A stretch of 64,000 bases of DNA from IMGVR_UViG_3300042386_001233:124001-188000; one strand, 5' to 3'. Numbered from the stretch's first letter, positions 2,909 to 54,380 are shown. The notes: generated from the letters alone by a model not told the origin. Program-made: numbers and translations.

Positions 2909-3502
2909 TTATGTCTGTAAAGTTAAAAAGTTGTCTATACCCATTTGTTCAATAAGCTTTAAGTAGCCTTCGTATAGTTTTATGCCATCTTCACTACCTT
3001 GTAGTAGAGGAATCATTATATTGGCTGTTAGTTCATCTCCTACCGCCCTAGCTGCAACAATAGTTGCTTTTTCTGTATCTGCAGCCTCTCTTACAGATGC
3101 TAAGTTATAGTTGATAATAGCAACCATGTCATGTCGTGTCCATGATGGAGGAGACACTACTAGTGGTTGATAATCTTGATCAAAAAATTCTAGTCTTGTT
3201 AAGTTGATTATTGAGTGTTGGTGTTCTTCTAGGGCATCTGCTTTAATGATAGCAGCAAGTTTCTTATATCCCCATCTTTCAAGATGAACAGCTTGAGCAC
3301 TTAATGAAGTTGTTTGTTGCCAGTGTATATTCAAAGACTTTTTAAGTAATCCGATAACATTATTTTCGGTCTCAGATACAACATTTTCTATAGTTTCATT
3401 AACCTCATTAGTTTCATTAGTCTGGCTAGCTTGTACTTCGTCCACTTGATTTTCCTTTACTTCAGCATTTTCGTTTAATAGTTCATCTATTGTTTTGGTC
3501 AT
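2909..3502 (-). CDS. bacterioferritin-like protein with degenerate ferroxidase centre
   Basis: Aligns by eye to Bfr (WGYKKLA, EEHQH, GDELTA, LIEQMGIDNFL); acidic N-terminal extension. Confidence 0.75.
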   Translation of the reverse strand: MTKTIDELLNENAEVKENQVDEVQASQTNETNEVNETIENVVSETENNVIGLLKKSLNIHWQQTTSLSAQAVHLERWGYKKLAAIIKADALEEHQHSIINLTRLEFFDQDYQPLVVSPPSWTRHDMVAIINYNLASVREAADTEKATIVAARAVGDELTANIMIPLLQGSEDGIKLYEGYLKLIEQMGIDNFLTLQT

Positions 3503-4001
3503 AATTATTAATCCATTTTTTATAGTTAGTATAAAATTGTTCTAAGTGCTGTTCATTGCGTATCATTCCTTCTATAATATTACACTGTACGCATAAAATT
3601 CCTCTAACCTTACCAGTATTGTGATCATGATCTATAACGGCAGCATTTCCTTTATTCTTAGCATGGTGAAAAACTGCAATACCACAGATACCGCAGTTCT
3701 TTATTGCTCTTAAATGTTTTAGCTCTTCTATAGTAATATTGTATTTTGTTATAAATTTGTAACAGGTTGTGCAGATTGTCGAACTGAAATATATGTGCCT
3801 GGTTTTATTGCATGATTGACATTGACCTATGTTTCCTTTACTCATTCTACATAGTCTACAGAAATTGTGTTTTTTGGATTTGAAAATAGTTCCACACTCG
3901 CAAGCCTTTAGCTTAAGTTTGCAATAATCACAAAATTTTCTAGAATTTTGAGGGACCTCATTTAATTTACATTTTCTACATTTTCTCATGATTATTACCA
4001 A
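3483..4001 (-). CDS. endonuclease VII-like homing endonuclease with Zn fingers
   Basis: CGIC...IDHDHNTGKVRGILCVQCN motif; multiple CxxC pairs. Confidence 0.85.
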   Translation of the reverse strand: MVIIMRKCRKCKLNEVPQNSRKFCDYCKLKLKACECGTIFKSKKHNFCRLCRMSKGNIGQCQSCNKTRHIYFSSTICTTCYKFITKYNITIEELKHLRAIKNCGICGIAVFHHAKNKGNAAVIDHDHNTGKVRGILCVQCNIIEGMIRNEQHLEQFYTNYKKWINNYDQNNR

Positions 4002-6720: not shown

Positions 6721-6721
6721 T

Positions 6722-6925
6722 TTATGTTTTCTTCAAGTATTCATCAGTATCATAACACTTCCATGTTTTGTGGCTTTCAAAACCACGCTCGCTAACACAA
6801 ATTTTTGGTCCGGTTAAGAGACCCTTCCCTTTAAAATGATATAATGCTGCCAATATTGCGGATATTGGATCATTACAATCAATGATATATTTTATTTGAC
6901 CAGACTTTACATAATATTTAGGCAT
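6722..6925 (-). CDS. hypothetical protein
   Basis: 67 aa, tightly packed between guaC and the NDT-like gene. Confidence 0.55.
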   Translation of the reverse strand: MPKYYVKSGQIKYIIDCNDPISAILAALYHFKGKGLLTGPKICVSERGFESHKTWKCYDTDEYLKKT

Positions 6926-6926
6926 G

Positions 6927-7457
6927 TTATACCGAGAAAAAATACCATCTTTTATAGGTATCTATGTTTTCCGATGTGTTTATATGAGAAAGATAATCTT
7001 TGATATCATCCCAAGAAGAAAAAATAGTTTGATGTGGTATTGTGCCGAATAACCAATCCGGGGCGTTTATCTTACCTTGCTCCATATGAATTATTATTGG
7101 CTTTTTCTGACGATTAGCCCAAAATATTTCTTCATATGTTCCGCATGGATGAATATCAAGATTCAGATTCACGACCAAAAAGTCACTAATATCTACAAGT
7201 CTTAAATCTACCCTGCGAATAACTTTCATCATTTCTGCAAGTTCATCGTATCTCTCTGCTTTTTTCAGTTTGGTCTTAATAGTATGAGAGTCACTGTCTT
7301 CCATACCTGTGTTTGTTGGCTTAGTAATAGGATTAAAGACTATGGAACCCATTTCTTCAAGAAATGGAGTAATATTATCTCTCCAAGTAGCTCCGCGATC
7401 AGCAACTCTATCCATAGCCCCGGCCAAATAAACTCGTTGATTCTTCAATCTATTCAT
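6927..7457 (-). CDS. nucleoside 2-deoxyribosyltransferase-like / nucleotide hydrolase
   Basis: VYLAGAM...WR...FNP...DLRLVDISDFLVV...GTYEE motif set. Confidence 0.75.
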   Translation of the reverse strand: MNRLKNQRVYLAGAMDRVADRGATWRDNITPFLEEMGSIVFNPITKPTNTGMEDSDSHTIKTKLKKAERYDELAEMMKVIRRVDLRLVDISDFLVVNLNLDIHPCGTYEEIFWANRQKKPIIIHMEQGKINAPDWLFGTIPHQTIFSSWDDIKDYLSHINTSENIDTYKRWYFFSV

Positions 7458-7606
7458 ATTTAATTAGTAGCGATCAGTAAATAAAAAGGTAAATAAGTTT
7501 CTTGACGAATATAATCTATGACAGCTAGATCTGTCATGTATTTTATATTGGGCGTCTATCATGCCAAAAACTATTGCCAAAACCAAAAAGAATAATATAA
7601 CTTCAA

Positions 7607-8326
7607 TCATGTTAGGTATCCAATATAATTGTGTCTCATGCGATTAACTTCATCAATCATCTGTTGTAGATGTTTTGGGTCAGTAGACCGACCAGATGGG
7701 TTATGATAGTACAAACCGACTGGGTGGTTGACCATCTTTATTCTAGCACCTCCCGCAGCACAACGCAACCACATATCTCCATCAGAAGCCGTCTTATAGT
7801 TTTCATCAAATAGCCCAAATCTATCATGTAAATTCTTCTTCCATAACGGCATACAATGAGGACTGTTATTATTTAGTAGATTACGGAAAGAGTGGGGTAG
7901 GCATGGGTAGACTTGATCATATGTATTATCTTCATATTTTTCATTTGCTTCTGTAGAAACATAAGTAATTCCATATGCTATGTCTAGTAAAGGATCTCTG
8001 TCAAATGCTTTAAGCAAAATGTCTATACTGTCAGTACTTTTACGATCATCAATATTCCAGTTGCCTATTATAGATGATGAACATAAACGAATAGCAATGT
8101 TCCACGCAGCATATAATCCTGGATCTTTTTCTAGTTGATGATACTTTACATTATTAAACCTTTTTGCAATTGGTAGGATATAGTCTTTTTCATTTTCTGT
8201 AGAACTACAGTCAAGAAAAATAAATTCTGTATTATTAAATACTGATTGTTTTAGCATATCATTGAGATATCCTTCAATGAATTTTTCACCTTTATAAAAC
8301 GAACAAAATATTGAACATTTAAACAT
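7607..8326 (-). CDS. glycosyltransferase family 2
   Basis: FLDCSSTENE, GLYAAWN, NIDD, FGLFDENYKTASDGDMWLR; start moved to MFKCSIF. Confidence 0.88.
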   Translation of the reverse strand: MFKCSIFCSFYKGEKFIEGYLNDMLKQSVFNNTEFIFLDCSSTENEKDYILPIAKRFNNVKYHQLEKDPGLYAAWNIAIRLCSSSIIGNWNIDDRKSTDSIDILLKAFDRDPLLDIAYGITYVSTEANEKYEDNTYDQVYPCLPHSFRNLLNNNSPHCMPLWKKNLHDRFGLFDENYKTASDGDMWLRCAAGGARIKMVNHPVGLYYHNPSGRSTDPKHLQQMIDEVNRMRHNYIGYLT

Positions 8327-8339
8327 ATGCAGATTTTTA

Positions 8340-9443
8340 TTAGTTATATTTGAGAAAATGTATGATTTTATCGCAAATAAAGCTGATTTGACTTTCACTA
8401 AGAGTGGGATATGAAGGAACCATTAGACATTGGTTTTGTAATATTTTTGAGTTTTCATTAGATACGCATTTAATAGGCTTCAGATATTTATGCTGATGTA
8501 TATCATAAAACATTGGCCTTGTATCTATTCCTGCTTCGTACAAATATAATTCGAGTGATTTTTTCTTTTCTAAATCAAAATCTAGAAATCTCATACCAAG
8601 CATCCAATTAGAATGAGAGGTATCGGGATCTATATGCTGAAAAGATATATTAGGCAATTTTAAAATAGATCTATATTGATTAAAAATATTCTTTTTTTGA
8701 TTTATAATCCAGTCTAAATCATTTAGCTGACCATATAAAATAGCAGCTTGTATATTTGTCATTCTGTAATTATAGCCAAGATAATCATGAATGAATTTTT
8801 TATGGGATTGCCCTTGATTTTTTACTGTATTGATATAAGAGAACAGCTCATCATCAGAAGTTATAAAAGCACCACCTTCTCCGCATGTTATTGTTTTATT
8901 ACCAAAAAAAGATATTGATGAAGCAAAACATTCTGATCCAGATGGTTTATCTCCATAGGATCCCAAGAAGCCTTCACAATTGTCTTCTACAAAAATAGTA
9001 TTTGGAAATTTTTGTTTTAGTTTTGGAACATTGATAATATTTCCGATATTATGTACTATCAATACTGCGGTTTCTTCATCTAAAAGTTCTTCCAGATAAG
9101 AGTCTTCAAAATTCCAAGTATATAAATTGGCGTCTACTGGTATTAGTTCATACTTTTGAGTATATAAAAAAGCATTCCACGCAGCTACATATACATTATT
9201 TGGAACAATAATTTTTTTGATAGATGGATATTTATATTGTAGTGCCAAAGCTAATAGATGAGTAGCTGTCGTCCCATTATTCGTTAGTACGATTTTATGA
9301 TTGTTGTATTTAGCTTTTGATTTTAATAAATTTTTTGTTAAATCCAGATACTCTCCTTGAGATGATATCCAGCCACTATCCAGTGCTTTATGGGCATGTT
9401 TTAGATTATTTTTAGTTAGATACGGTTGGTATATAGGTATCAT
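8340..9443 (-). CDS. DegT/DnrJ/EryC1/StrS PLP aminotransferase (perosamine synthase-like)
   Basis: GWISSQG, TNNGTTA, EDNCEG, SFFGNKTITCGEGG (PLP Lys), GYNYRMTNIQAA. Confidence 0.92.
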   Translation of the reverse strand: MIPIYQPYLTKNNLKHAHKALDSGWISSQGEYLDLTKNLLKSKAKYNNHKIVLTNNGTTATHLLALALQYKYPSIKKIIVPNNVYVAAWNAFLYTQKYELIPVDANLYTWNFEDSYLEELLDEETAVLIVHNIGNIINVPKLKQKFPNTIFVEDNCEGFLGSYGDKPSGSECFASSISFFGNKTITCGEGGAFITSDDELFSYINTVKNQGQSHKKFIHDYLGYNYRMTNIQAAILYGQLNDLDWIINQKKNIFNQYRSILKLPNISFQHIDPDTSHSNWMLGMRFLDFDLEKKKSLELYLYEAGIDTRPMFYDIHQHKYLKPIKCVSNENSKILQNQCLMVPSYPTLSESQISFICDKIIHFLKYN

Positions 9444-16752: not shown

Positions 16753-18414
16753 ATGCTCAAATCTACCATCGTTACAGGAATATGGGATTTGGGCAGAGGT
16801 TCGCTAGGCGACGGATGGAGCAGGTCTTTTGATCGCTACAGAAACAACTTCTCTGTTCTGCTAAATAATATTAAAGATATTCCTACTATAGTTTTTATAG
16901 ATAAAGAACACGAAGATATAGTATGGAAATACAGAAGCAGAGACAACACAGCTGTTTATCATCATTCTGCTAAGGATTTTGATAATAATTTTTTCCCTTT
17001 TCGCAATCAAGTGGAAAAAATAAGGACAAATGAAGACTGGTTATCTCAAGCTGGCTGGTTAAGAGATAGCACTCAAGCGAAATTGCCATTATACAACCCC
17101 ATGGTAATGAGCAAGATGTTCCTATTGCACAATGCAAAAGTATTTAATCCATTTAGTAGTGAGTACATGTATTGGCTTGATGGTGGAATATCCAATACTG
17201 TTCACCCAGGATACTTTAGCCACGACAAAGTAATAGAAAAAATACAAGATATCACTAAAAAATTCCTCTTTGTGTGTTTTCCTTATGAAACAGAATCAGA
17301 AATCCATGGATTCGACATAAGAAAAATGAGAGAATACGCTAAATCAGAAGAGGTTAATAGGGTTGCTAGAGGAGGATTTTTTGGTGGACACATTGATTAT
17401 ATATCTGAAGCTAATAATCTGTATTATAGTCTATTGAATGATTCTCTCAATAACGGTCTCATGGGTACTGAAGAAAGCATATTTACCCTAATGACATATT
17501 TGCAACCAGAAATGTATCAACATGAAACAATTAATCATGATGGTTTATTGTCAACATTTTTTGAAAAAGTAAAAAATAATCAAACAGTTATAGAAGAAAT
17601 AGCAAAAAACAATCCTAGAAAAAAGCATTCAAATAACGAAACAGTATTATACATTAATGCTTTTAATTCTCCAGAACAATTACAAATGGTCTTGGATAGT
17701 TTTGAACTACATGATAACTCATTTATTACTCAAACAAAAAAGATTCTAATAAACAATAGCACAAAAGAAGATCTCTTCAGTAAGTATGATGCCATTTGCG
17801 AAAAATACGGATTTTCAGAGCAGATTAAAAAAGGAAATTTAGGAGTTTGTCGAGCTAGACAATTTGCTGCTGAACATTTCGCAGACCTTGGTTCTAAATA
17901 CATGATCTTTTTTGAGGACGATATGTTGTTAGATTATTCTATATCTAATTGTAATTTTGGTTTTAAAAAATCGACACCTAATTTATTAAGTAGTCTTATT
18001 CGTATAATGGACAATGAAGAGTATGATTTTTTGAAATTTAGCTTTAGCGAATTTTATGGACATAACGGAGAACAGTGGAGTTGGCATAATGTTCCTTCAG
18101 AATTACGAGTAAAATATTTTGGAGACGCAAAGAAAAAACCCCCAACGAAGTTCTCCTGCATAAAATCTTATAATGGCATACCTTATGCAGAAGGTGAGAT
18201 TTACTATTCAAATTGGCCCCATATAATAGATCAGGAAGGCAACCAAAAACTATTCTTAGATACTACATGGTCAAATCCTTTTGAACAAACGTGGATGAGT
18301 CACATATATACTCTAACAATTAACAATAAAGTTAAACCAGCGATATTATTAGCTAGTCCAATAACACATAATAGGGTTCATTTTTATGAAGCGAACGAAC
18401 GCAAAGAAAATTAA
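16753..18414 (+). CDS. HtrL/WlaTC-like domain fused to a GT-A glycosyltransferase domain
   Basis: TIVTGIWDLGR, YNPMVMSKMFLL, YWLDGG, GGFFGG, GTEESIF; C-terminal domain with NLGVCRARQ and FFEDD. Confidence 0.65.
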   Translation: MLKSTIVTGIWDLGRGSLGDGWSRSFDRYRNNFSVLLNNIKDIPTIVFIDKEHEDIVWKYRSRDNTAVYHHSAKDFDNNFFPFRNQVEKIRTNEDWLSQAGWLRDSTQAKLPLYNPMVMSKMFLLHNAKVFNPFSSEYMYWLDGGISNTVHPGYFSHDKVIEKIQDITKKFLFVCFPYETESEIHGFDIRKMREYAKSEEVNRVARGGFFGGHIDYISEANNLYYSLLNDSLNNGLMGTEESIFTLMTYLQPEMYQHETINHDGLLSTFFEKVKNNQTVIEEIAKNNPRKKHSNNETVLYINAFNSPEQLQMVLDSFELHDNSFITQTKKILINNSTKEDLFSKYDAICEKYGFSEQIKKGNLGVCRARQFAAEHFADLGSKYMIFFEDDMLLDYSISNCNFGFKKSTPNLLSSLIRIMDNEEYDFLKFSFSEFYGHNGEQWSWHNVPSELRVKYFGDAKKKPPTKFSCIKSYNGIPYAEGEIYYSNWPHIIDQEGNQKLFLDTTWSNPFEQTWMSHIYTLTINNKVKPAILLASPITHNRVHFYEANERKEN

Positions 18415-19702
18415 AGCCAAGACTCAAACAGCCACAAAGAGTAATAAAGTAGAGACTATTTTTATTCAGATAGCTTCGTATCGAGATCCTCAACTCCTCC
18501 CAACCTTGAGAGATTTGTTTAGTAAAGCAAAAAATCCAAATAATATCACTGTTGGAATATGCTGGCAACATTCTCCAGATGATACATGGGATGTCCTAGC
18601 AGAGTTTGAAAACGATCCAAGAATAAAAGCTATAAACATAGACTATAAAGATAGTCAAGGTGTTTGCTGGGCTAGAAATTTAGTTCAATCTCTATATAAT
18701 GGAGAAACATATACTCTACAACTAGATAGTCACCACAGATTCGTTCAAGACTGGGATGAAATCTTAATAGATATGCTAAAAGGTTTACAAAAAGACGGCT
18801 ACAATAAACCGTTAATAACAGCATATATACCCAGCTTCGATCCAGACAATGATCCCGCATCCAGAGTTCAAGAGCCTTGGAAAATGAATTTTGATAGATT
18901 CATTCCTGAAGGAGCAGTTTTCTTTTTACCTGCCTCTTTTGATTCTTGGGACGATAAAACCAAACCTCTTCCAGGCAGATTTTATAGTGCTCATTTTGCT
19001 TTTAGCGTAGGAGCATTTTGTAAGGAGGTTCCTCACGATCCTCAATATTATTTTCATGGTGAAGAAATTAGTATTGCGGCTAGAGCATATACTCATGGGT
19101 ATGATATATTCCATCCTCATAAGGTTGTTTGTTGGCATGAATATACCAGAAAGGGAAGAACCAAGCAGTGGGATGATGATAAAAAATGGGGAGACAGGAA
19201 TAATATCTGTCATCTACGAAACAGAAAATTGTTTGAAATGGATGGAGAAAAAAGAGATATAGATTTTGGCCAATATGGTTTTGGCACAGTAAGATCTTTG
19301 AGAGATTACGAAAAATATAGTGGATTATCATTTGGTAAAAGAGCTATACAAAAAAGAGTACAGGATCATCAAGCACCACCAGATCCAGAAACATCCTATC
19401 TACCCGATGAGGATTTTGATAAAAGACTATTAAGGATATTCAAGCATTGCATAGATATTCAATATGGTCAAGTACCAGAAAATGATTATGATTTTTGGGC
19501 TGTTGCTTTTAAAGATAAAGAAGGTCGAGATATATACAGGCAGGACGCAGATAAAGACGAAATACTACGTATTAAAAATGATCCAGATGGATATTGCAAG
19601 GTGTGGAGAGAGTTTCAAACAGAAGTTACTCCAACAAGCTGGTTGATTTGGCCTCATAGCTTATCAAAAGGATGGGCAGAACCGATTGTAGGGTATCTGT
19701 AA
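18386..19702 (+). CDS. GT60-like polypeptide GlcNAc transferase (Skp1-hydroxyproline GlcNAc-T-like)
   Basis: IFIQIASYRDP, GVCWAR, LQLDSHHRF..DWD, FYSAHFAF, EVPHDP..YFHGEE...ARAYTHGYDIFHP, WHEY. Confidence 0.8.
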   Translation: MKRTNAKKIKAKTQTATKSNKVETIFIQIASYRDPQLLPTLRDLFSKAKNPNNITVGICWQHSPDDTWDVLAEFENDPRIKAINIDYKDSQGVCWARNLVQSLYNGETYTLQLDSHHRFVQDWDEILIDMLKGLQKDGYNKPLITAYIPSFDPDNDPASRVQEPWKMNFDRFIPEGAVFFLPASFDSWDDKTKPLPGRFYSAHFAFSVGAFCKEVPHDPQYYFHGEEISIAARAYTHGYDIFHPHKVVCWHEYTRKGRTKQWDDDKKWGDRNNICHLRNRKLFEMDGEKRDIDFGQYGFGTVRSLRDYEKYSGLSFGKRAIQKRVQDHQAPPDPETSYLPDEDFDKRLLRIFKHCIDIQYGQVPENDYDFWAVAFKDKEGRDIYRQDADKDEILRIKNDPDGYCKVWREFQTEVTPTSWLIWPHSLSKGWAEPIVGYL

Positions 19703-25646: not shown

Positions 25647-26233
25647 ATTTTATAACCACTTACTCTTGAGATCATAGGTCCAAAACATCCACCCGGAGAT
25701 ATTGATTCAAATTTTAGTAATGTACTATTAGAATTAGCAGTAAAAGTCTCAGAAATAGTATTCCAGCCAAAAGTTTCTGCTGAAACTTGAAACCCATAAC
25801 TTGGACACGTATAAGTATATGTTTTATTAAGTATTATATTAGTACCAGTTAGCGTTAATTTCATAACTTTATCAGCAACATTATTATCAAAACGCACCCC
25901 ACAATTTCCGCTTAGATCAAAATAAATTACATAATTTTGTCCAGGTATTGTTGTAATAGTTTGACTGATATATCCAATCCCACAAGCGTTTAAGTCTACA
26001 AAATATCTATCAAAACCATAATAATTATAATCTACAGAACTAAAAGTCCAATTACTAAGGGAATTTTCTAATGATCCGTTTATCACTATGTTAACAGGTT
26101 CTGCGCTTGGCGTAGGCGTTATTGTTTGTGTAGGAGTAGGGGTATTGGTTTTTGTTATCGTGGGAGTAGGAGTAACACTACTTAATGGTTTTTGAGTAGA
26201 CACTGGACAGCAATTAATACTTATGATGCTCAT
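25643..26233 (-). CDS. Cys-anchor + Thr/Pro stalk + DUF642/choice-of-anchor-C-like carbohydrate-binding domain
   Basis: N-terminus [22 protein letters not shown] repeats, NIVINGSLE...VDLNA...[13 protein letters not shown]...FDLSGN...FTA...L.F.S...FGP. Confidence 0.7.
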
Positions 26234-28302
26234 GGGATATAGTTAATTTCTCTTTGGGCTATAAAATAGTAGGTGGGTTCTGGTGTAGGTTGAGGCGTAG
26301 AACTTGGTGGTGGTGTAGAGCTTGGGGTTGCTGCCGGTGTGCTGCTAGATGTTGGTTCTGGAGTTTGAGTCGGAGTAATACTTGGAGTTGTTGTTATTGT
26401 CGGCGTTACGGTAGCAGTTGGTGTTGGGGTTGGAGTTACGCAGCATGATTCAAAGCAATACGTTCCAGGAAATGATACCCAAGAACTTGGAATATTAGAT
26501 GGCGAAACAGATGTAGAATCAAAATATGCATCTTGACAATTTGTAAAATGCATAGCCCTAATTCTAAAAGTTAGAGGCTGATCCGCACTTGTGCAAGTAC
26601 CGTCTCCACTTTTATTCTCAAAACTATTTAGATAATACTGATAAGATGAAGCGTTAGGATTAAATATGCAGATATTATCTACTATATCATCAACCGATCC
26701 GCTTTGACCATTTGCGTCCAGTGCTTGTATCTGATACCCCTCTATACAGCCTTGACTACCTGGTTCAGTATTTCTGTTCCATGTTAAATATATAATTACT
26801 TGGTTAGGGCTTTCAGTACCATCCTTTATACATGAACAGGCAGCACTTTGAATACTAGGAGTTAATAACTGACAATTATTTGTTGGCGTTGGGGTCGGAC
26901 TTTGGCTAGGCGGTGGAGTACAACAATTACAATTACTTGTATTTCCCTCAAATGCCCATACTGGAGGAACATTACATTGACAGGCAGTAGATATTCCAGT
27001 TATATTTAATCCTCCAACACAAGAAATATTAGCACTTGCTGTCCATTTATTAGCACATGAACTAGAACCAGTATATGCTACACTAGGATCACAAGTAACT
27101 GACATAAAGTATGTATCGCCACAAGCCAATGTGCCGCTACTAGTCCAATAATTTGGCATGACTTTAGTAAATAACAAATCTAGACTTATAGTTCTGGTTA
27201 TATTGTTACAATTTAATACAAATGTAGTCAAACCATTCCAGTCGCAGCAAGTAGCTCTACTTGGAGATGGCGTTAATGTCTGAGATGCTGTTAATGAAGG
27301 CGTTGGAGTTAGCGTTCTGGTGACTGTTTGGGTTGGTGTTCTTGTTGGAGTAGGAGTGCAACAACTGCAATTATCAAAATTGCCAACAAAACTCCAAATA
27401 GGAGGAGCGTTACATTGACAGGCTTCTTTTATTCCAGTAATTATTAGACCAGTAACACAGGATATGGTTAATGAAGAAGTCCATTTATTTATACATGAAC
27501 CTGATCCTGTGTATCTAGCATTTGGATCACATGTTATCGTAGAACTAAAAGTATCTCCACATGATAAACTTCCACTAGCTTGCCATGTATTTGCTGCTGT
27601 TTTTGTATAGGCTACTGGAATGACTAAATTGCCACAAGAAGCATCAAACTGTAAGAATGTATTACCGTCCCACTCACAACATGTAACAGTAGATGGGCTT
27701 GGAGTATTTGTCGGAGTAGCAGTAATTGTGATAGAAGGAGTAATAGAGGGTGTTACTGTAGCAGTAGCAGATCTTGTGATAGTAACTGTTGGGGTTTGGC
27801 TTACTGTAATACTTGGTGTTTGCGTTGGTGTTTGCGTAGGTGTTGGTGTCTGTGTATTGGTCTGAGTAATACTAGGAGTTAGTGTAGGGGTCGATGTAGC
27901 TGTTCGACTATTAGTGGGGGTTGCAGTTGGTGTTCTTGTATTAGTAGGGGTGTTTGTTCTAGTTGTTGTTATGCTTGGAGTTACGGTAGGGGTTACTGTT
28001 CTTGTTAGTGTTCTAGTTGGTGTTCTTGTTGGGGTAACTGTTCTAGTTACAGTAATGCTTGGAGTTATTGTAGGGGTAAGTGTTGGTGTCGGTGTTGGCG
28101 TTTTTTTAGGGGTTCTAGTTGGTGTTGGAGTTTTAGTAGGTGTCTTAGTAGGCGTTTTACTAAGGGAATTTCTATCTATAAAAGGACACCCATCATCCGA
28201 CCCTATCCTTGGAGGTTTTGGAGTTTCTGTTGGTGTTCTGGTTGGTGTTGGAGATGGCGGAAGTATTTTCCGCTCATTTTGTCCGTTCATTCTGTTTGTC
28301 AT
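26230..28302 (-). CDS. large mucin-like Thr/Pro/Ser-rich protein with two Cys-rich repeat domains
   Basis: 690 aa; long TPT tracts separate two ~110 aa homologous Cys-rich domains and a third beta-rich Cys domain. Confidence 0.8.
26920..27684 (-). repeat. internal duplication: two Cys-rich domains (27358-27684 and 26920-27252)
   Basis: TCC.W.G.T...W..SG.L.CGDT...TCDP...YTGS.SC.NKWT.S..ISCV.GL.ITGI..ACQCN.PP.W.F.GN..NC.CC occurs in both. Confidence 0.9.
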
Positions 28303-28305
28303 TTA

Positions 28306-29307
28306 TTACAATACTTTCGCAGCTATTAAACATCCTTTTGACACTGAATGTAACGGATCGGCGGCATGCTTAACTTCTTTAATAGACAAAGGAAAATTAT
28401 TTTCTGATAGTTTTTTCTTAAAATGTTCAATATAACCACCAGCTTGTGATGTTCCACCAGCAATGACTATTGTTAGTGGGTCTTTAAACTTTGGTAAAGC
28501 TTTATGATCTGTTAGTGCTGCTGTTAATTGTTTAGTAGTATAATCTATTAAACGATCATAATATGACGATACAGCTGCTAATATAGGATTATCATTATGC
28601 TGACCAACATTAAAATTTCCACCCTCTTTCTCAGCCTGTACGACACTATCCGGTTCCCCTGTGGCTACGGCGCTCATTCTATCTACCCAATCCCCAGATT
28701 TAGTTGTGGAAAATACAACAGTGGGTTCACCATTTAGCATTACACAAACATTAGTCATACCAGCACCACAGCTAATAGCTATACCAGTATAATCATTATC
28801 CGCTAACTCAGCATAGCATAAAGCTTCAGCTTCATTAATTGATCTAGCGTTATATCCACAGCTATCTAAAATAGTTTTGACTACATCTTCATGATATCCA
28901 ACATCAAAATCTTCATCTTCTTGGTCTACTGGTTGAGCAGGAACACAAAAAACGATCTTTTCAAGGGGCTCCGAAGATTGCCCGACTACTTCCTTTAATA
29001 TAAAAGCTAAGACTCTTTTCGCATCTTTCTCTTTTGCAGAAACAACTCCTTTGTACATTGGTCTTTTAGCGGTGTCGTTTCTCTCAATAGCTTTTTCAAT
29101 AGCATCTTGTCCGAGGATAATAAAAGAACCGTCTGTATCTTTAATAAAGACTTTTCCAGCCAATCCCTTTTCTATCATCTTTGTTGCTACTGGAGTAGAT
29201 GGCTTGATGATATAAAAGGCATCTCTAAAGTCTTTGTATTGTACTTTATCTCCTTTGTCCTCAGATAAAACAATATAGCTTGTTCCTACGTCAAGACCCC
29301 TAGCCAT
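28306..29307 (-). CDS. actin-like ATPase (volactin/MreB-FtsA superfamily)
   Basis: Phosphate-1 GLDVGTS, connect INEAEA, phosphate-2 ISCGAGMTNV, GDWVD, adenosine IVIAGGTS, terminal P..SVSKG. Confidence 0.88.
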   Translation of the reverse strand: MARGLDVGTSYIVLSEDKGDKVQYKDFRDAFYIIKPSTPVATKMIEKGLAGKVFIKDTDGSFIILGQDAIEKAIERNDTAKRPMYKGVVSAKEKDAKRVLAFILKEVVGQSSEPLEKIVFCVPAQPVDQEDEDFDVGYHEDVVKTILDSCGYNARSINEAEALCYAELADNDYTGIAISCGAGMTNVCVMLNGEPTVVFSTTKSGDWVDRMSAVATGEPDSVVQAEKEGGNFNVGQHNDNPILAAVSSYYDRLIDYTTKQLTAALTDHKALPKFKDPLTIVIAGGTSQAGGYIEHFKKKLSENNFPLSIKEVKHAADPLHSVSKGCLIAAKVL

Positions 29308-29727: not shown

Positions 29728-30618
29728 CTATATCGTACCCATGACTCTGCCCTTTTGGGTACGAACAACATAACCCTTACGAACCAAAAACGGCTCAATA
29801 CTATTCTCGATAGTATCTAAAGCTATTCCAGTCATTGCTGATATAGACTTAAGACCCAAAGGATTACCCTTGCTTCGTCTCAAAGCATCAATATAAAGCC
29901 TATCATACAGATCCAAACCCTTACTATCTATACCCTGAGTAGAAAAAATGGTATCAATTGTACATGGATCGGTATGGCATATCTTGTAGTTTTTATACCA
30001 TAATAGTCTAGCATTAAGAATTCTCGGAGTACCCTTGCTTCTTTTTGCTATCTCAACCAAATCTTCATCAGAGATTTCTAGATCTAATTTAGCAGAGTTC
30101 AATCTTGCTACTTTAGCTAGATCATCATCCGTATAGAAAGAAAGATGTTCTTTGATTGTAAACCTGTCATAAAATGGCTGACTTAAACTTCCCCCACTAG
30201 TAGTCGCTCCGATAAGAGTAAACATTGGAAGATCAATAGTTTCTGGAGCATCTTCTGATGATATACTAAGTACAAAATCTTCCATGATAGGATACAAAAA
30301 CTCCTCTACTGTTTTGGGCAACCTGTGTATTTCGTCAATAAACAACACAGACCTAGCAGAGATTCCCATAATATATGGCAAAAGATTTTTTATGCTACGA
30401 ATATTAGCAGCATTGAGAGTATAAAGACTGACCCCCATTTCGTTTGCTATAGCACTCGCTATGGTAGTCTTGCCAAGCCCAGGAGGGCCGTCTATTAAAA
30501 CATGAGGCAGCACACTGCTAGACATTTTACAGCCCATAGCAGAGATGCGTAGACGCTCAATAACGTCGCCCTGACCAATGATTTCATCAAAACTCTTCGG
30601 CCTTGTAACATTTGCCAT
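29728..30618 (-). CDS. ruvB: Holliday junction branch-migration AAA+ helicase RuvB
   Basis: RPKSFDEIIGQ, GPPGLGKTT, FIDEIHRL, LYPIMEDF, FTLIGATT, DRF, GTPR, IEPFL...RTQKGR. Confidence 0.95.
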   Translation of the reverse strand: MANVTRPKSFDEIIGQGDVIERLRISAMGCKMSSSVLPHVLIDGPPGLGKTTIASAIANEMGVSLYTLNAANIRSIKNLLPYIMGISARSVLFIDEIHRLPKTVEEFLYPIMEDFVLSISSEDAPETIDLPMFTLIGATTSGGSLSQPFYDRFTIKEHLSFYTDDDLAKVARLNSAKLDLEISDEDLVEIAKRSKGTPRILNARLLWYKNYKICHTDPCTIDTIFSTQGIDSKGLDLYDRLYIDALRRSKGNPLGLKSISAMTGIALDTIENSIEPFLVRKGYVVRTQKGRVMGTI

Positions 30619-30621
30619 AAT

Positions 30622-31038
30622 TCACATTCCTCCAAAAATTTTCAGAGCATCCTTCACTAACAATAAAGGATTATTCTGATTAGTAAGATCGTATACTTTA
30701 TTTACCAAATCTACAGCTTCTTTGTTAGAAAAACCATAGTTTTCCAAAATTTTATATGCTTTTTTAAGATACTCAGGCTCCTCTTTCGTAACTATTTCAG
30801 ATGACTTATTAGATTCTGTTCTAGGTTTTGTGGTCTTTTTTGAGAATTGTGTTTTTATATTTGCTATCTGGCGTATCTTATAAACATTCCCGCAATCACA
30901 TACAAGTTTAAAACCCTTCACTTGAACTTGATTCAAAAATAGCCAATGTTCTGATTCGCACTCTGTATTTGTGCATTTATATTTAAACTGAGCATCTAGA
31001 CTAATCGGTTTCAGGCTTTTGGTTTGATTTTGTATCAT
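30622..31038 (-). CDS. Zn-ribbon + RuvA C-terminal-domain-like protein
   Basis: CTNTEC...VCDCG N-terminus; C-terminal AYKILENYGFSNKEAVDLV...LLVKDALK; 3 nt upstream of ruvB. Confidence 0.6.
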   Translation of the reverse strand: MIQNQTKSLKPISLDAQFKYKCTNTECESEHWLFLNQVQVKGFKLVCDCGNVYKIRQIANIKTQFSKKTTKPRTESNKSSEIVTKEEPEYLKKAYKILENYGFSNKEAVDLVNKVYDLTNQNNPLLLVKDALKIFGGM

Positions 31039-31480
31039 CTTCTTCTTTCACCCAAAAAATAAAATCGTTTTGATCACTATCGTACGCACTATCAAGAATT
31101 CCTTTATTAACCAAGGAATTTAATATATTACTAATCATTCTATTATTCAGATCTTCTATAATAGTTTGAAGAAGTTTATCAGTTAAACAATATCTTACTT
31201 CTTTTGTTTTTTTATTTATCTGTTTCTTTGCGTGGTTTTTAATTATAATAGCAGATTCATCATGGGTTAGTGTCTCATTCATCTCCTCTATTTCTTGTTT
31301 GCTCATTTCAGATATGGATGCCACCATAGAATCGTGTTCTACTTCTTTTATAGCTCCAAAAAATTTAAAAACTAATGATCTTGAATGGTCAACAAAGTCA
31401 TCAAAATCATTTATAAAAAACCATTGTTCATTTTTCATTGAACTAGGGTTACTCCTTCGTACTTTGGAATCTCTGTCCAC
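31001..31480 (-). CDS. hypothetical protein (paralog family with 49190 and 49533 ORFs)
   Basis: C-terminal LNSLVNKGILDSAYDSDQNDFIFW. Confidence 0.6.
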   Translation of the reverse strand: MDRDSKVRRSNPSSMKNEQWFFINDFDDFVDHSRSLVFKFFGAIKEVEHDSMVASISEMSKQEIEEMNETLTHDESAIIIKNHAKKQINKKTKEVRYCLTDKLLQTIIEDLNNRMISNILNSLVNKGILDSAYDSDQNDFIFWVKEEDDTKSNQKPETD

Positions 31481-32353
31481 ATCAGTTTAGCAGAGAACTC
31501 TGGTTTGTACACTGTGACCACCCTATCTGTTTTTTTATCTTTTTCCACAATTGCTTCTACTATTACTCTATCTTCATTAAGTCTTTTTTCTATCTCTCTA
31601 ATAGAGTCAGACATACTATCGAATGTTTTATTGTATTCTGGTCTATTAAATAGTGTTTTAAAATATGTGGTCATAATTATTTATCTTTGAGTTCTGTTTG
31701 ACAGTTATTGTGTTTGTCTACAAATGTTCTTTCAAATCCCAATTCTGCTAGTATGGGCATTTCGTAAAAGGTAATAGTAAATCTTACATTACCGGCATCA
31801 TCTGTCATTTTTGTCCACTCAATTCTTTTTGCTTGGCTCATGTTGGTTGCAAGATCGTATGCTATTAACGGAGTTTCTGTCAAAGAACCAAAAGCCATCG
31901 CTAAATATAAAAATAATGCTGGTAACATAACATCCGTGTCTTTCAGTTTAAAATATCAAACATACCATCATAATAATTCGGCTGTTGTAAAAAGTGAACA
32001 GCGTTTGCTATTAAATGATTTCTATACTCAGTATCTAATTTGTTGTGAATAAAATATTTTGTTTTGTAAATTGGTTCTTTGTAATGATTGTTCCCCAAAT
32101 ACAGGGAGTTTTTGAAGTTCCCTGATTTGGAGAAGTAATCATTCACAGGTAACGAACCTTTAGGAAAGCTCGGGCCAATATACCATACGTTTGAAGGATG
32201 TTCAACTATTTCATTTAGAGTATCATATAACATTTTTCCCCAAGCATCCCAAGCGTCGGGGTCAAACTTGAAATACTTTTTATAATGACTCTCTAAATTG
32301 TCCTGACTATCACCATAGTCATCGTAGTCATCATCTTCATAATCTTCGTGCAT
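31435..32353 (-). CDS. three small hypothetical proteins (31435-31674, 31677-31928, 31943-32353)
   Basis: Tightly packed ORFs, no recognised motif. Confidence 0.5.
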
Positions 32354-46440: not shown

Positions 46441-47742
46441 TTAGGTATCTCTAGAATCTCCATATAGGTATTTAAATGTAGGAAACCTCAAAGAGATACC
46501 GCCTTTTTCGTTCTCTGTCTCCTCAAAATATTGTACCAAAATAATCTTGCCAAGAATCTTCTTAGGGTTCTTATAAAACTCTTGTCTTTGTTCGATACTA
46601 AAACCAGACCCAACTCGTACAGTATGTCCCTTATGCTGAATCATAACACAACTCAACATAGTTTCCTCACATTCTGCACCATCCTTAACATAACGGAATG
46701 GCCCCATTTCAGTATCTAGAACCTCATATTCATCATCAAAGAATGACTTATATTTGAGTAGGTCTTTGGATCGCTTTCCTTTATATGGAGCATCTGATCG
46801 AAGCATAAGCCCCTCCCAGCCATTCTCAGTAGATTCTTTGACAAATTCTTGGAAATGGTTTTCATCCTTAATCAAGGATTGCTCCAGAAGTGTCAAGCAT
46901 GGACATTCGTTCTTCTTCATAATCTCTGTAAGATTCTTGAGCCTGATACTAAATGGTCGATTTTTCTCTCCCTTCTGGCTATAAAACTCATCATGAGTAA
47001 TCATATCAAAAATTTTATAGGAAGGATTGGGAATAGTATGATCCTTCTTGCGAAGTTCCTTCATTACTCCTTGAAAATCCTCGTTACCCTCTTCATCAAC
47101 CAGACAAAGCTCTCCATCAAGAACTACATTAGTAAGTCCCAAAGCTTTAATCCCACCGCTAACAATATCAAGAGTATCAAAGATTTTTCCCGTGCGGGAA
47201 TAAAAGGTAGTATTGCCATTACTATCAACAATAGCAATACATCTAGCACCGTCGATCTTCCTGCTAACATACCATCCATCCTTCCAGTCTACGATTTTAG
47301 GAACATACTTGTCCGCTAGAGCAACACTAAATGTTGGGATATGATCTGGAATAGCCTTATTAATCAGCTTATCTCCAGCACGGGTTTTCAAATCCTTGTC
47401 AATGATGCAATGAACGAGTTCTTCGTATTCTCTTTGGTTGTCAATAAAGCTATTAACTGCTCCAATAGCATCATGACCTGTGATTTCTCTATTCTTCAAA
47501 GCATCCAACAGATCAAATATAGACTTGTATACTTTACCACGCAGATGACTTTTCTTTTTAAGATTATCACTAGTTACATTGTACTGCCAAAGAGGATGAT
47601 AAGTATAGAGCAGAATCTTTTTAAGAAAATTTGCTCCACTCTCATTAGAGGAAGTATAATCCTCAATAATGCCAACTTTATCAAGTGTGCTGCTAGTTGA
47701 CTTCAAATCACGAACAAAACCATTAAGATGCTCAAACGACAT
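46441..47742 (-). CDS. lig: ATP-dependent DNA ligase
   Basis: SRKIDGAR (KxDG), LDGEL, IFD, EGLMLR, YKGKRS.DLLK.K, VGSGFS, LRFPTF; start moved to MSFEHL, downstream of the promoter. Confidence 0.93.
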   Translation of the reverse strand: MSFEHLNGFVRDLKSTSSTLDKVGIIEDYTSSNESGANFLKKILLYTYHPLWQYNVTSDNLKKKSHLRGKVYKSIFDLLDALKNREITGHDAIGAVNSFIDNQREYEELVHCIIDKDLKTRAGDKLINKAIPDHIPTFSVALADKYVPKIVDWKDGWYVSRKIDGARCIAIVDSNGNTTFYSRTGKIFDTLDIVSGGIKALGLTNVVLDGELCLVDEEGNEDFQGVMKELRKKDHTIPNPSYKIFDMITHDEFYSQKGEKNRPFSIRLKNLTEIMKKNECPCLTLLEQSLIKDENHFQEFVKESTENGWEGLMLRSDAPYKGKRSKDLLKYKSFFDDEYEVLDTEMGPFRYVKDGAECEETMLSCVMIQHKGHTVRVGSGFSIEQRQEFYKNPKKILGKIILVQYFEETENEKGGISLRFPTFKYLYGDSRDT

Positions 47743-47767
47743 TTTTATTTTCTCCTGTGTTGTCCCA

Positions 47768-47796
47768 ATTCTACCATACGGTAGTCCCTTTGTCAA
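47768..47796 (-). promoter_or_regulatory. sigma70 promoter (ligase)
   Basis: TTGACA-N17-TAGAAT. Confidence 0.75.
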
Positions 47797-48008
47797 GTAT
47801 CATCTAATCGGTTTCGTTTCTTAAATACTATCGCCATAGACTGAACCAAATCGCTGCCAGAAGTTTGAAACCAACATGGAAAAAACGCATGAATTATCAA
47901 ACAAAATCCAGCCAATAAAGATAAGCATCCAAAAAATACAGCAAACCTAAAATGTTGCCAGTATGTCATATTGTTTTCTGCTAGGTGTTCTTTAATCTTA
48001 TTTTTCAT
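47793..48008 (-). CDS. small membrane protein (DUF6356-like)
   Basis: HL..NNMTYWQHFRFA...IHAFFP..F.T.GS. Confidence 0.6.
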   Translation of the reverse strand: MKNKIKEHLAENNMTYWQHFRFAVFFGCLSLLAGFCLIIHAFFPCWFQTSGSDLVQSMAIVFKKRNRLDDT

Positions 48009-48345
48009 ATCGTTTTTGTCTTGAAAGAAAATAATTCATAGCGTTAACGATGCTCTGAAAATCATCACCCAGTTTGCCTATGCCAGTATTGCAAGGTTCA
48101 CAGAGCCAGCCCCTAAAACTATTATCATCATGATCATGATCTAAGGCCCATTTGTAGGGAACCTTTTTACAGCACTCACATACTTCTGGTTTTGGTGGCG
48201 CTTTTTTATGTAGCTTAACTCTAATCTTAGAATGTTTTTTAACACACTTGCGACATCTGCTATCAAGATTATCTTTGTACATAGTGTGTTTGGGAAAACT
48301 TGCTAAGTTTTTACGTTTTCCACAGTAAGTACAAATTTTTCTCAT
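47998..48345 (-). CDS. endonuclease VII-like homing endonuclease
   Basis: CECC...LDHDH...FRGWLCEPCNTGIGKLGD. Confidence 0.85.
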   Translation of the reverse strand: MRKICTYCGKRKNLASFPKHTMYKDNLDSRCRKCVKKHSKIRVKLHKKAPPKPEVCECCKKVPYKWALDHDHDDNSFRGWLCEPCNTGIGKLGDDFQSIVNAMNYFLSRQKRYEK

Positions 48346-48891: not shown

Positions 48892-48912
48892 CAGAATCCT
48901 TCCTGTTTAAAG

Positions 48913-48988
48913 TAGGGCGAGTTGGAGTCGAACCAACCTATGAACACCTTATAAGAGTGTCGGATGCAACCGGCTTACCTTCCGCCCC
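48913..48988 (-). tRNA. trnI: tRNA-Ile(UAU)
   Basis: GGGGCGG/UCGCCCU acceptor, anticodon arm ACACU-CUUAUAA-GGUGU, T-arm GUUGG-UUCGACU-CCAAC, A73. Confidence 0.85.
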
Positions 48989-54319: not shown

Positions 54320-54337
54320 AGTGTCTCCTGTGCCGGA

Positions 54338-54378
54338 ATTATATCCTAGTATCGTCAAGTTGTCAAGCCAGACTTGAG
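54338..54378 (-). promoter_or_regulatory. interlocked sigma70 + sigma28-like promoter (uvsE)
   Basis: TTGACA-N17-TATAAT with CTCAAG-N16-GACGATAC. Confidence 0.8.
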
Positions 54379-54380
54379 AA

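What the first reader, a model, noticed from the sequence alone, without database searches (positions are those of the whole stretch)
29728..31038. RuvB paired with a Zn-ribbon/RuvA-domain-III fusion instead of a true RuvA
Seen: the gene 3 nt upstream of ruvB ends in AYKILENYGFSNKEAVDLVNKV...LLVKDALK, which resembles RuvA domain III (AV.AL..LGY...EA..MV...LIREAL). Its N-half is a C-x4-C...C-x-C Zn ribbon plus linker, with no OB or HhH domains. Known: RuvA domain III docks and activates RuvB, while domains I-II bind the Holliday junction. Inference: a swapped targeting module loads the RuvB motor on a different DNA structure or protein. No RuvC is present in the window.
Basis: partly seen in the sequence, partly recalled or inferred. 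Interest (0 to 1): 0.75.

Follow-up and report, generated by a model that had tools for sequence, protein, structure and literature searches.

The report
Phage RuvB with zinc-ribbon mini-RuvA
A widespread group of large lake-water phages carries its own RuvB DNA motor, usually partnered with a small protein that keeps only the motor-docking tail of RuvA and replaces RuvA's junction-binding body with a basic zinc ribbon.

Summary
Window 29728..30618 (-) encodes a full RuvB with all three Pfam domains above cutoff and E 6e-63 to E. coli RuvB. Three bases upstream, 30622..31038 (-) encodes a 138-aa protein made of a four-cysteine zinc ribbon, a variable linker and a three-helix C-terminal domain. 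That C-terminal domain is homologous to RuvA domain III. hhalign against true RuvA gives 93-94% probability (E about 1e-7). The family profile's best PDB hit is the domain III chain of the RuvA-RuvB complex (1ixs_A, E 3.8e-4). Foldseek ranks RuvA first in the PDB (TM 0.81, 1.4 A). The family's most conserved positions align with RuvA L167, L170, G171, Y172 and L199, the RuvB-docking face. There is no OB or HhH domain. The family has 359 clusters at 50% identity, and the gene sits directly upstream of RuvB in 71 of 80 viral loci. It has been lost at least three times, including in three complete genomes. There is no RuvC, but the phages carry endonuclease VII genes (two in this window), a ligase, and in complete relatives RecA-like and DnaB-like genes. 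The likeliest role is a minimal RuvA-like adaptor and activator for phage branch migration. What the zinc ribbon binds is unknown. This is a new variant of a known system.

The parts
29728..30618 (-). Phage RuvB, a 296-aa AAA+ dsDNA translocase. It has the large ATPase domain, the lid and the C-terminal winged helix. Its pre-sensor-1 beta-hairpin tip is 4 residues shorter than in E. coli.
   Evidence: Pfam RuvB_N, AAA_lid_4 and RuvB_C above cutoff; 6e-63 to E. coli RuvB with catalytic motifs aligned; hairpin comparison.
30622..31038 (-). Whole gene for the zinc-ribbon/RuvA-domain-III adaptor (138 aa plus stop), translationally coupled to ruvB.
   Evidence: ORF; junction sequence with GGAGGA and a 3-nt spacer; 36 close homologues and 359 clusters at 50% identity.
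30844..31008 (-). Residues about 11-65: a basic four-cysteine zinc ribbon (C22, C27, C47, C49, plus near-invariant P11, Y20, H31, W32).
   Evidence: Conservation; model pLDDT about 97 with four beta strands; only generic zinc-ribbon fold matches; mean net charge +6 across the family.
30775..30843 (-). Residues about 66-88: a variable, low-confidence flexible linker, 7-70 aa long across the family.
   Evidence: pLDDT 61-73; length spread; hhalign aligns it to the RuvA domain II-III linker.
30625..30774 (-). Residues 89-138: a three-helix domain homologous to RuvA domain III, the predicted RuvB-docking and activating module.
   Evidence: hhalign 94%, E 1.4e-7; PDB profile hits to RuvA domain III of five species; Foldseek 1ixs_A TM 0.81, RMSD 1.4 A; the conserved positions L98, Y101, G102, F103, E107, L127, K129 and L132 align with E. 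coli RuvA L167, L170, G171, Y172, E176, L194, R196 and L199.
31001..31480 (-). Conserved upstream gene (159 aa from the GTG start, probably 145 aa from the ATG at 31438). It accompanies RuvB in every locus examined and may carry a C-terminal winged helix.
   Evidence: 79 of 79 loci; directly abuts RuvB where the adaptor is absent; weak HTH_56 (12 of 38 members) and DsrD (9 of 38) hits; the Atlas record starts at residue 15.
31943..32353 (-). Conserved 136-aa gene of unknown function in the same block.
   Evidence: 78 of 78 loci; no Pfam, PHROG or PDB match.
3483..4001 (-). Endonuclease VII-family protein (172 aa), a candidate junction resolvase.
   Evidence: Pfam Endonuclease_7 2.5e-13, above cutoff.
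47998..48345 (-). Second endonuclease VII-family protein (115 aa), a candidate junction resolvase.
   Evidence: Pfam Endonuclease_7 4.9e-13, above cutoff.
46441..47796 (-). ATP-dependent DNA ligase, part of the recombination and repair context.
   Evidence: phrog_114 3.2e-83; Pfam DNA_ligase_A_M and DNA_ligase_OB_2.

Best explanation
The 138-aa protein is a minimal, domain-swapped RuvA. It keeps RuvA's flexible linker and domain III and has a basic zinc ribbon in place of the tetrameric OB/HhH junction-binding core. Inferred mechanism: domain III docks on the hydrophobic surface of the phage RuvB formed by helix alpha3 and the pre-sensor-1 beta-hairpin. There it acts as it does in RuvAB, as a tether or fulcrum and as a nucleotide-exchange and ATPase-activating factor for the hexameric dsDNA pump. 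The zinc ribbon, joined by the flexible linker, anchors the complex, most probably to DNA at a branch point. Together with the phage's RecA-like recombinase, endonuclease VII and ligase, the pair would drive branch migration during recombination-dependent replication or repair of a 150-230 kb phage genome. Shown here: RuvB identity, homology to domain III, conservation of the docking residues, translational coupling and synteny, and the recombination gene context. Inferred: physical binding, ATPase stimulation, DNA binding by the zinc ribbon, and the substrate.
For: RuvB is complete and has intact catalytic motifs. Domain III homology rests on hhalign at 93-94% probability and E about 1e-7, PDB profile hits led by the RuvA domain III chain crystallised with RuvB, and Foldseek top hits at TM 0.81. 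The most conserved domain III positions coincide with RuvA's invariant L167, L170, G171, Y172 and L199. L167A and L170A abolish RuvB activity in vivo without affecting junction binding (PMC2628435). Domain III binds alpha3 and the pre-sensor-1 hairpin and acts as exchange factor and activator (PMC9477746). The stop codon and ATG are 3 nt apart with an embedded Shine-Dalgarno sequence. The gene is adjacent to RuvB in 71 of 80 viral loci and in all six divergent contexts checked. The zinc ribbon has mean net charge +6, and at least +3 in 90% of members. Endonuclease_7, RecA-like and ligase genes are present, and a separate DnaB-like helicase means RuvB is not the replicative helicase.
Against: No interaction, ATPase or DNA-binding data exist, and no complex model could be computed here. 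The window protein itself scores below Pfam RuvA_C and TIGR00084 thresholds; only profiles reach significance. The adaptor is absent from 9 of 80 loci, including three complete genomes with no domain III anywhere, and this needs at least three independent losses. RuvB can therefore function without it or with another partner. The zinc ribbon gives only generic fold matches and nothing shows it recognises junctions or oligomerises. The RuvB hairpin tip is shortened and variable. PF02945 members are not all junction resolvases.
Confidence: 0.6

Rival explanations
1. Domain III docks on the phage RuvB as above, but the zinc ribbon binds a protein rather than DNA. Candidates are the always-present 159-aa putative winged-helix protein, endonuclease VII, or a replisome component. 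The adaptor would then recruit the motor to a protein-marked site, and another protein would supply DNA recognition.
For: The 159-aa and 136-aa genes accompany RuvB in 79 of 79 and 78 of 78 loci, more constantly than the adaptor. The 159-aa protein gives repeated weak winged-helix hits. Zinc ribbons commonly mediate protein contacts (general knowledge). The adaptor can be lost while these neighbours stay.
Against: The zinc ribbon is strongly basic across the family, which fits nucleic-acid binding better. The winged-helix assignment is below threshold. No interaction evidence exists.
Confidence: 0.2
2. The protein is a decoy or regulator rather than a loader. A free domain III would occupy the docking site on the phage RuvB (or on the host RuvB) to block capture by host RuvA, or to inhibit host RuvAB. 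The zinc ribbon would serve only for stability or localisation.
For: Isolated domain III is sufficient to bind RuvB in the solved complexes (1ixs, 7pbl). The adaptor is dispensable in several lineages, as expected of an accessory regulator.
Against: Strict translational coupling and co-inheritance with the phage RuvB, a highly conserved basic zinc ribbon, and a retained tether-like linker all argue for a bipartite adaptor rather than a simple cap. The phage RuvB hairpin differs from bacterial ones, so cross-binding to host proteins is not assured.
Confidence: 0.12
3. The C-terminal domain is merely a generic UBA-like three-helix bundle with no relation to RuvB, and the adjacency is incidental.
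For: The fold is small and shared with UBA domains. UniProt names one family member a 'UBA domain-containing protein'. Single-sequence scores are sub-threshold.
Against: The profile-profile E-value is about 1e-7 to RuvA specifically. RuvA domain III from five species outranks the only UBA hit, E 0.001 against 0.23. RuvB-contact residues are conserved. The gene is adjacent to RuvB across a family with 359 clusters.
Confidence: 0.04

Closest known systems
Bacterial RuvA-RuvB branch-migration complex (E. coli, T. thermophilus 1ixs/1ixr, S. typhimurium/S. thermophilus 7pbl)
   Same: The RuvB is about 40% identical to bacterial RuvB, with the same three domains and motifs. The partner gene lies directly upstream, as ruvA does. 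The partner has a homologous flexible linker and domain III with the same conserved hydrophobic docking residues.
   Different: The partner lacks domain I (OB) and domain II (two HhH motifs), so it has no known means of tetramerising or of clamping a four-way junction. It has a basic four-cysteine zinc ribbon instead. The RuvB pre-sensor-1 hairpin tip is 4 residues shorter. The system is phage-encoded, is paired with endonuclease VII rather than RuvC, and its adaptor is dispensable in some lineages.
Stand-alone 'RuvA, C-terminal domain protein' entries (e.g. AlphaFold DB D4E5H7, 77 aa)
   Same: RuvA domain III occurs without domains I and II (query residues 61-134 aligned).
   Different: Those proteins have no zinc ribbon, and their context and function were not examined here.
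Phage T4 recombination system (UvsX recombinase, UvsW branch-migration helicase, endonuclease VII resolvase, ligase)
   Same: The overall toolkit in these phages is a RecA-like recombinase, endonuclease VII-family genes, a ligase, a DnaB-like helicase and rIIA/rIIB.
   Different: The candidate branch-migration motor here is an AAA+ RuvB with a domain III adaptor, not an SF2 helicase like UvsW. Whether a UvsW homologue is also present was not tested.
Jumbo-phage and poxvirus RuvC-like resolvases
   Same: These are viral acquisitions of parts of the bacterial RuvABC system.
   Different: They carry RuvC without a RuvB-like ATPase (PMC7824862). Here the reverse holds: RuvB and a RuvA fragment are present without RuvC.

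Membership tests
RuvA (TIGR00084 / COG0632 equivalog) | Domain I, an OB fold (Pfam RuvA_N, PF01330) | tested here: not met
   No hit in the protein, the family or the whole virus record. The model shows a zinc ribbon instead.
RuvA (TIGR00084 / COG0632 equivalog) | Domain II with two helix-hairpin-helix motifs | tested here: not met
   No HhH family hit at E up to 1 in any of 26 members. Residues 1-65 are beta strands.
RuvA (TIGR00084 / COG0632 equivalog) | Flexible linker followed by domain III (Pfam RuvA_C, PF07499) | tested here: met
   hhalign 93-94% probability, E 1e-7 to 3e-7, covering E. coli RuvA residues 117-202. PDB profile E 3.8e-4. Foldseek TM 0.81. The window protein alone is below the Pfam cutoff; 3 of 26 members hit PF07499, best E 4.6e-5.
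RuvA (TIGR00084 / COG0632 equivalog) | Whole-protein score above the curated cutoff (85 bits) | tested here: not met
   18 bits for the window protein. 19 of 26 members match only the C-terminal end of the model.
RuvA (TIGR00084 / COG0632 equivalog) | Tetramer that binds and opens a Holliday junction | not testable with these tools
   No multimer or DNA-complex prediction was available, and there are no biochemical data.
RuvA domain III as a RuvB-docking module | Conserved hydrophobic docking residues (E. coli L167, L170, Y172, L199) | tested here: met
   These align with L98 (L in 127 of 146 sequences), Y101 (Y, F or L in 141 of 146), F103 (F or Y in 144 of 146) and L132 (L or I in 138 of 146). 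G171 aligns with the invariant G102. Mutant data come from PMC2628435.
RuvA domain III as a RuvB-docking module | Physical binding to RuvB helix alpha3 and the pre-sensor-1 hairpin | not testable with these tools
The hairpin is present in the phage RuvB but shortened.
RuvB | RuvB_N AAA+ domain, AAA lid and RuvB_C winged helix, all above cutoff | tested here: met
   149.4, 33.9 and 59.6 bits against cutoffs of 27, 27 and 24.7.
RuvB | Walker A, Walker B, sensor 1, arginine finger, sensor 2 and the C-terminal DNA-binding beta-hairpin arginines | tested here: met
   All are aligned with E. coli and P. aeruginosa RuvB. The C-terminal hairpin has R, K and R at the positions of P. aeruginosa R314, R317 and R319.
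UBA domain | Best sequence and structure matches are to UBA domains | tested here: not met
   The only UBA chain hit is 2g3q_A at E 0.23, against RuvA domain III at 0.0011-0.024. Foldseek top hits are RuvA. The fold class is shared, so this speaks to family and not to fold.
Zinc ribbon (Zn_ribbon_4/5-like) | Two cysteine knuckles on a small beta sheet | tested here: met
   C22-x4-C27 and C47-x-C49 are invariant or nearly so. TM is about 0.5 to Zn_ribbon_4/5 clusters and to AFDB 'zinc finger/thioredoxin putative' entries. Metal binding itself was not tested.

The most novel reading that the evidence does not exclude
The zinc-ribbon/domain-III protein retargets a RuvB motor away from Holliday junctions. 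One possible target is replication forks, D-loops or DNA ends. Another is a conserved phage module (159-aa putative winged-helix protein, adaptor, RuvB, small membrane protein, Volactin-type actin) that moves or positions phage DNA in the cell. RuvB would then be used as a general tethered dsDNA pump, with domain III as a portable activation handle.
Probability: 0.12. Interest if true: 0.85.

Novelty: new variant of a known kind. Interest (0 to 1): 0.58.

Why it matters
RuvA combines two jobs: holding the junction (domains I and II) and operating the RuvB motor (domain III). This family is a natural separation of the two. It pairs the motor-operating handle with a completely different 60-residue anchor, in a small soluble protein with a cognate RuvB encoded next to it. 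That gives a simple system for testing what domain III alone contributes (tether, nucleotide-exchange factor, ATPase activator) and how little DNA-binding architecture a RuvB motor needs. It also shows that phage-encoded RuvB exists and is common in lake phages of 150-230 kb. A survey of 224 jumbo phages had found RuvC-type resolvases that were not coupled to RuvB. Here the motor is combined with endonuclease VII instead of RuvC. The repeated loss of the adaptor, with RuvB retained, is a natural experiment on how far the motor depends on it.

Tried and rejected
1. Single-sequence Pfam and PHROG scans of the 138-aa protein gave only noise, with CRISPR_Cas9_WED and BAR_3 below cutoff. Profiles were needed.

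2. The first AlphaFold model, from 26 sequences, was mediocre (pLDDT 66.8). It was replaced by a 146-sequence model at pLDDT 90.6.

3. The GenBank/INPHARED phage collection has no homologue of the adaptor. Its RuvB hits reach at most 41% identity, and the annotated ones I inspected lie among host-type genes (dgt, RNase HII, mraY) or at the end of a prophage record. So I reject the idea that a known phage RuvB exists in that set.

4. I rejected the idea that partner-less phages hide the adaptor elsewhere, or carry domain III fused to another protein. Neither the full-length nor the domain-III-only profile finds anything in three complete genomes, while positive controls are found.

5. I rejected canonical RuvA or RuvC elsewhere in these genomes. 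Note that the TIGR00084 genome search also missed the adaptor in G006, so that search is insensitive to domain III alone.

6. I rejected RuvB as the replicative helicase, because a DnaB-like gene is present in all five complete genomes.

7. The zinc-ribbon domain could not be tied to any specific functional family. Ribosomal zinc ribbons, Zn_ribbon_4/5, DPH-type, LysW and the MRNIP N-terminus all match at TM of about 0.5 or below.

8. The 136-aa neighbour has no detectable relative. The 159-aa neighbour gives only sub-threshold winged-helix hints.

9. I found no visible difference in the RuvB docking region between partner-carrying and partner-less phages. A co-variation test between hairpin-tip insertions and the adaptor was not pursued, because the insertion appears confined to one or two clades, which leaves no statistical power.

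10. The literature searches found no description of this family.

Full report
**Where the window comes from.** The window is positions 11422-75421 of a 90.5-kb IMG/VR virus record that CheckV rates 65% complete. Its GC content is about 35%. It is a tightly packed early/DNA-metabolism region of a large tailed-phage-like genome. It carries rIIA and rIIB, an ATP-dependent DNA ligase, HNH endonucleases, a primase-polymerase-like gene, UvdE, ThyX and sugar-modification genes. Complete relatives are 154-229 kb, and one has direct terminal repeats. The exact locus recurs in at least 23 lake-water or freshwater DNA runs from 2018 to 2024. No cultured or catalogued phage resembles it; rIIA reaches at most 38% identity over part of its length.

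**Checking the observation.** The ORFs are as described.
- Window 29728..30618 (-) encodes a 296-aa protein. It scores RuvB_N 9.5e-44, AAA_lid_4 2.7e-8 and RuvB_C 2.9e-16, all above Pfam cutoffs.
- It aligns end to end with E. coli RuvB at 6e-63. Walker A, Walker B, sensor 1, the arginine finger and sensor 2 are all in place.
- It keeps R, K and R at the positions of the DNA-binding hairpin arginines R314, R317 and R319 of P. aeruginosa RuvB.
- The tip of its pre-sensor-1 beta-hairpin is 4 residues shorter than in E. coli.
- Window 30622..31038 (-) encodes the 138-aa protein. Its stop codon is 3 nt from the ruvB ATG, and its final Gly-Gly codons spell GGAGGA, a Shine-Dalgarno sequence for ruvB.

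**The small protein is a real, large family.**
- The word-based search found 36 homologues.
- An exhaustive profile search of 1.84 billion representatives found 359 clusters at 50% identity. The 150 listed are mostly 120-185 aa and nearly all match across both domains.
- Across 146 diverse members, C22, C27, C47 and G102 are invariant. P11, Y20, H31, W32, C49 and E107 are at least 90% conserved.
- The AlphaFold model from this alignment has pLDDT 90.6. It shows a four-stranded zinc ribbon (residues about 16-54, pLDDT about 97), a low-confidence linker (about 66-88) and three helices at 89-100, 105-119 and 124-137.

**Is the C-terminus RuvA domain III?** Four independent lines say yes.
1. Profile-profile comparison with nine genuine RuvA sequences, taken from ruvA-ruvB operons of E. 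coli, Acinetobacter, Wolbachia and others. hhalign gives 93.4% probability and E 2.6e-7, aligning phage residues 54-135 with E. coli RuvA 117-202, which is the linker plus domain III. A domain-III-only profile gives 94% and E 1.4e-7.
2. hmmsearch of the family profile against all PDB sequences. The best hit is 1ixs_A, the T. thermophilus RuvA domain III crystallised with RuvB, at E 3.8e-4 and gapless over 52 residues. With the domain-III-only profile, RuvA domain III from five species scores E 0.0011-0.44, while the only UBA domain scores 0.23.
3. Foldseek with both models ranks 1ixs_A first in the PDB (TM 0.78-0.81, RMSD 1.4 A, probability 1.00), followed almost entirely by RuvA entries.
4. 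Member-wise scans. 19 of 26 close members hit the C-terminal end of TIGR00084 ruvA, and 3 hit Pfam RuvA_C with a best E of 4.6e-5. JGI had automatically named three members as the RuvA subunit.

The window protein alone is below every curated threshold. That explains why it looks unannotated.

**Is the RuvB interface kept?**
- Domain III binds a hydrophobic composite surface on RuvB made of helix alpha3 and the pre-sensor-1 hairpin. It acts as a nucleotide-exchange factor and ATPase activator (PMC9477746).
- E. coli RuvA L167A and L170A abolish RuvB activity in vivo without affecting junction binding (PMC2628435, citing Nishino 1998).
- In my RuvA alignment the invariant domain III positions are A163, A166, L167, L170, G171, Y172 and L199.
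- Through the hhalign register these fall on phage A94, I97, L98, Y101, G102, F103 and L132.
- The eight most informative columns of the phage domain are L98, Y101, G102, F103, E107, L127, K129 and L132. These correspond to E. coli L167, L170, G171, Y172, E176, L194, R196 and L199.
- The conservation pattern is therefore that of a RuvB-docking domain III and not just of a helical bundle. Physical binding remains an inference, because no complex prediction was available.

**The N-terminal half.** No OB or HhH domain is detectable. The zinc ribbon matches only generic zinc ribbons at TM of about 0.5 or below: ribosomal zinc-ribbon proteins, Zn_ribbon_4/5, TFIIB-type, DPH-type, LysW and the MRNIP N-terminus. 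It is basic, with mean net charge +6 and at least +3 in 90% of members. Domain III is about -1, and the linker varies from 7 to 70 residues. This is compatible with a nucleic-acid anchor on a flexible tether, but it is not proof.

**Synteny.**
- Using RuvB as the anchor, 219 viral contigs encode relatives. Among the best 80 (at least 70% identity), 71 have the adaptor immediately upstream, with a gap of -38 to +5 nt.
- All five divergent members whose contigs I looked up (67%, 38% and three at 26-32% identity) are likewise directly upstream of a RuvB of about 297 aa.
- Nine loci lack the adaptor. There RuvB abuts the homologue of window gene 31001..31480.
- Three of these nine are complete genomes with neither the full protein nor any domain III elsewhere. 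Positive controls were found.
- On a RuvB tree the partner-less phages are scattered. Supported branches force at least 3 changes, and 5 is the most parsimonious number.
- Their RuvB docking region looks no different from that of partner-carrying phages. The adaptor is therefore frequent but dispensable.
- By contrast, the 159-aa and 136-aa upstream genes are present in 79 of 79 and 78 of 78 loci. The former gives repeated sub-threshold winged-helix hits: HTH_56 in 12 of 38 members and DsrD in 9 of 38.

**What the motor is for.**
- None of five genomes has RuvC or canonical RuvA.
- All five have Endonuclease_7 family genes above cutoff. Two are in this window, at 3483..4001 and 47998..48345.
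- The four complete genomes have a RecA-like gene.
- All five complete genomes tested have a DnaB-like helicase.
- The window also carries a ligase and UvdE.
- The economical reading is therefore a phage recombination and repair pathway in which RuvB, usually with its mini-RuvA, supplies branch migration and endonuclease VII supplies resolution. RuvB is not the replicative helicase.

**Expression.** A 222-nt metatranscriptome contig matches 30881-31102 exactly. This is weak evidence of expression, because DNA carry-over cannot be excluded.

**Comparison with what is known.** The system works like RuvAB but is not a RuvA. Two defining domains were tested and are absent, and the curated whole-protein threshold is not met. 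It is best described as a RuvA-domain-III-containing adaptor paired with a bona fide RuvB. A survey of 224 jumbo phages reports RuvC-like resolvases that are not coupled to a RuvB-like ATPase (PMC7824862). The RuvB hits in GenBank "phage" records that I inspected are host genes. Three literature searches found no description of this family. I therefore rate it a new variant of a known kind.

**Verdict.**
A swapped targeting module on a RuvB-activating handle is well supported. A different substrate is not shown, and the recombination context argues for branched DNA.
- Confidence that domain III docks on and regulates the phage RuvB is about 0.6-0.7. Confidence that the zinc ribbon binds DNA is about 0.4.
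- Interest is 0.58.

Noticed in passing
window 28306-29307 (-): A 333-aa actin-fold protein matches Pfam Volactin at 5.7e-66 over its full length. Volactin is an archaeal (Haloferax) cell-shape actin, but here it is encoded in a freshwater phage. It lies downstream of RuvB and a small membrane protein in 42 of 58 loci with enough room. It may be a phage cytoskeletal element.
   Followed up: partly
window 31001-31480 (-) and 31943-32353 (-): Two small genes (159 or 145 aa, and 136 aa) accompany RuvB in 79 of 79 and 78 of 78 viral loci, more constantly than the domain III adaptor. The first gives weak winged-helix hits (HTH_56, DsrD). The second has no detectable relative.
   Followed up: partly
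loci L036, L044, L051, L055, L058, L074, L078, L079, L080; genomes G001-G003: In 9 of 80 related loci the adaptor gene is absent and RuvB follows the 159-aa gene directly. Three of these are complete genomes with no domain III anywhere. The losses are scattered on the RuvB tree and need at least three events.
   Followed up: yes
window 3483-4001 (-) and 47998-48345 (-): Two separate Endonuclease_7 (T4 endonuclease VII family) genes lie in one window. Every related genome checked has at least one. Which of them, if either, is the junction resolvase is unknown.
   Followed up: partly
window 30622-30640 (-): The near-invariant C-terminal Gly-Gly of close family members is encoded by GGAGGA, which doubles as the Shine-Dalgarno sequence of ruvB. 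Part of that 'protein' conservation may therefore be a nucleotide-level constraint.
   Followed up: no
window 26230-28302 (-): A 690-aa protein consists of long Pro/Thr-rich linkers separating two repeated cysteine-rich modules of about 100 aa plus a C-terminal domain. The region has unusually high GC (0.39) and positive GC skew. Function is unknown.
   Followed up: no
RuvB residues about 118-128; loci L016-L040 and others: One or two clades of the phage RuvBs carry an acidic insertion of 5 or 6 residues (for example D-E-E-D-K-D) at the tip of the pre-sensor-1 hairpin, exactly where domain III is expected to dock. Whether their adaptors compensate was not tested.
   Followed up: no
window 53408-54394 (-), 55202-55834 (-), 46441-47796 (-): A UvdE UV-damage endonuclease (5.2e-41), ThyX (1.6e-46) and an ATP-dependent DNA ligase sit together. 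This repair and nucleotide-metabolism set fits a sunlit lake habitat.
   Followed up: no
window 4541-9443 (-) and 16753-19702 (+): A cluster of glycosyltransferases, an aminotransferase and a dehydrogenase includes very strong PHROG matches (up to 4.9e-174). It may serve sugar modification of DNA or of the virion or host surface.
   Followed up: no
window 48912-48988 (-): A single tRNA-Ile with anticodon TAT, which would read the AUA codon.
   Followed up: no
GenBank records MK448681, CAKLQF020000007, MN180249 (loci L087-L089): RuvB (and in two of the three records RuvA) genes in these 'phage' records sit at the end of a prophage record or among host housekeeping genes (dgt, RNase HII, mraY). 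They look like host DNA or mis-binned contigs rather than phage genes.
   Followed up: partly
G007:C1:126372-126488 (+): A weak second match (E 0.003) to only the zinc-ribbon part of the adaptor profile occurs elsewhere in one complete related genome, with an in-frame TAG. It may be an unrelated zinc ribbon or a remnant.
   Followed up: no
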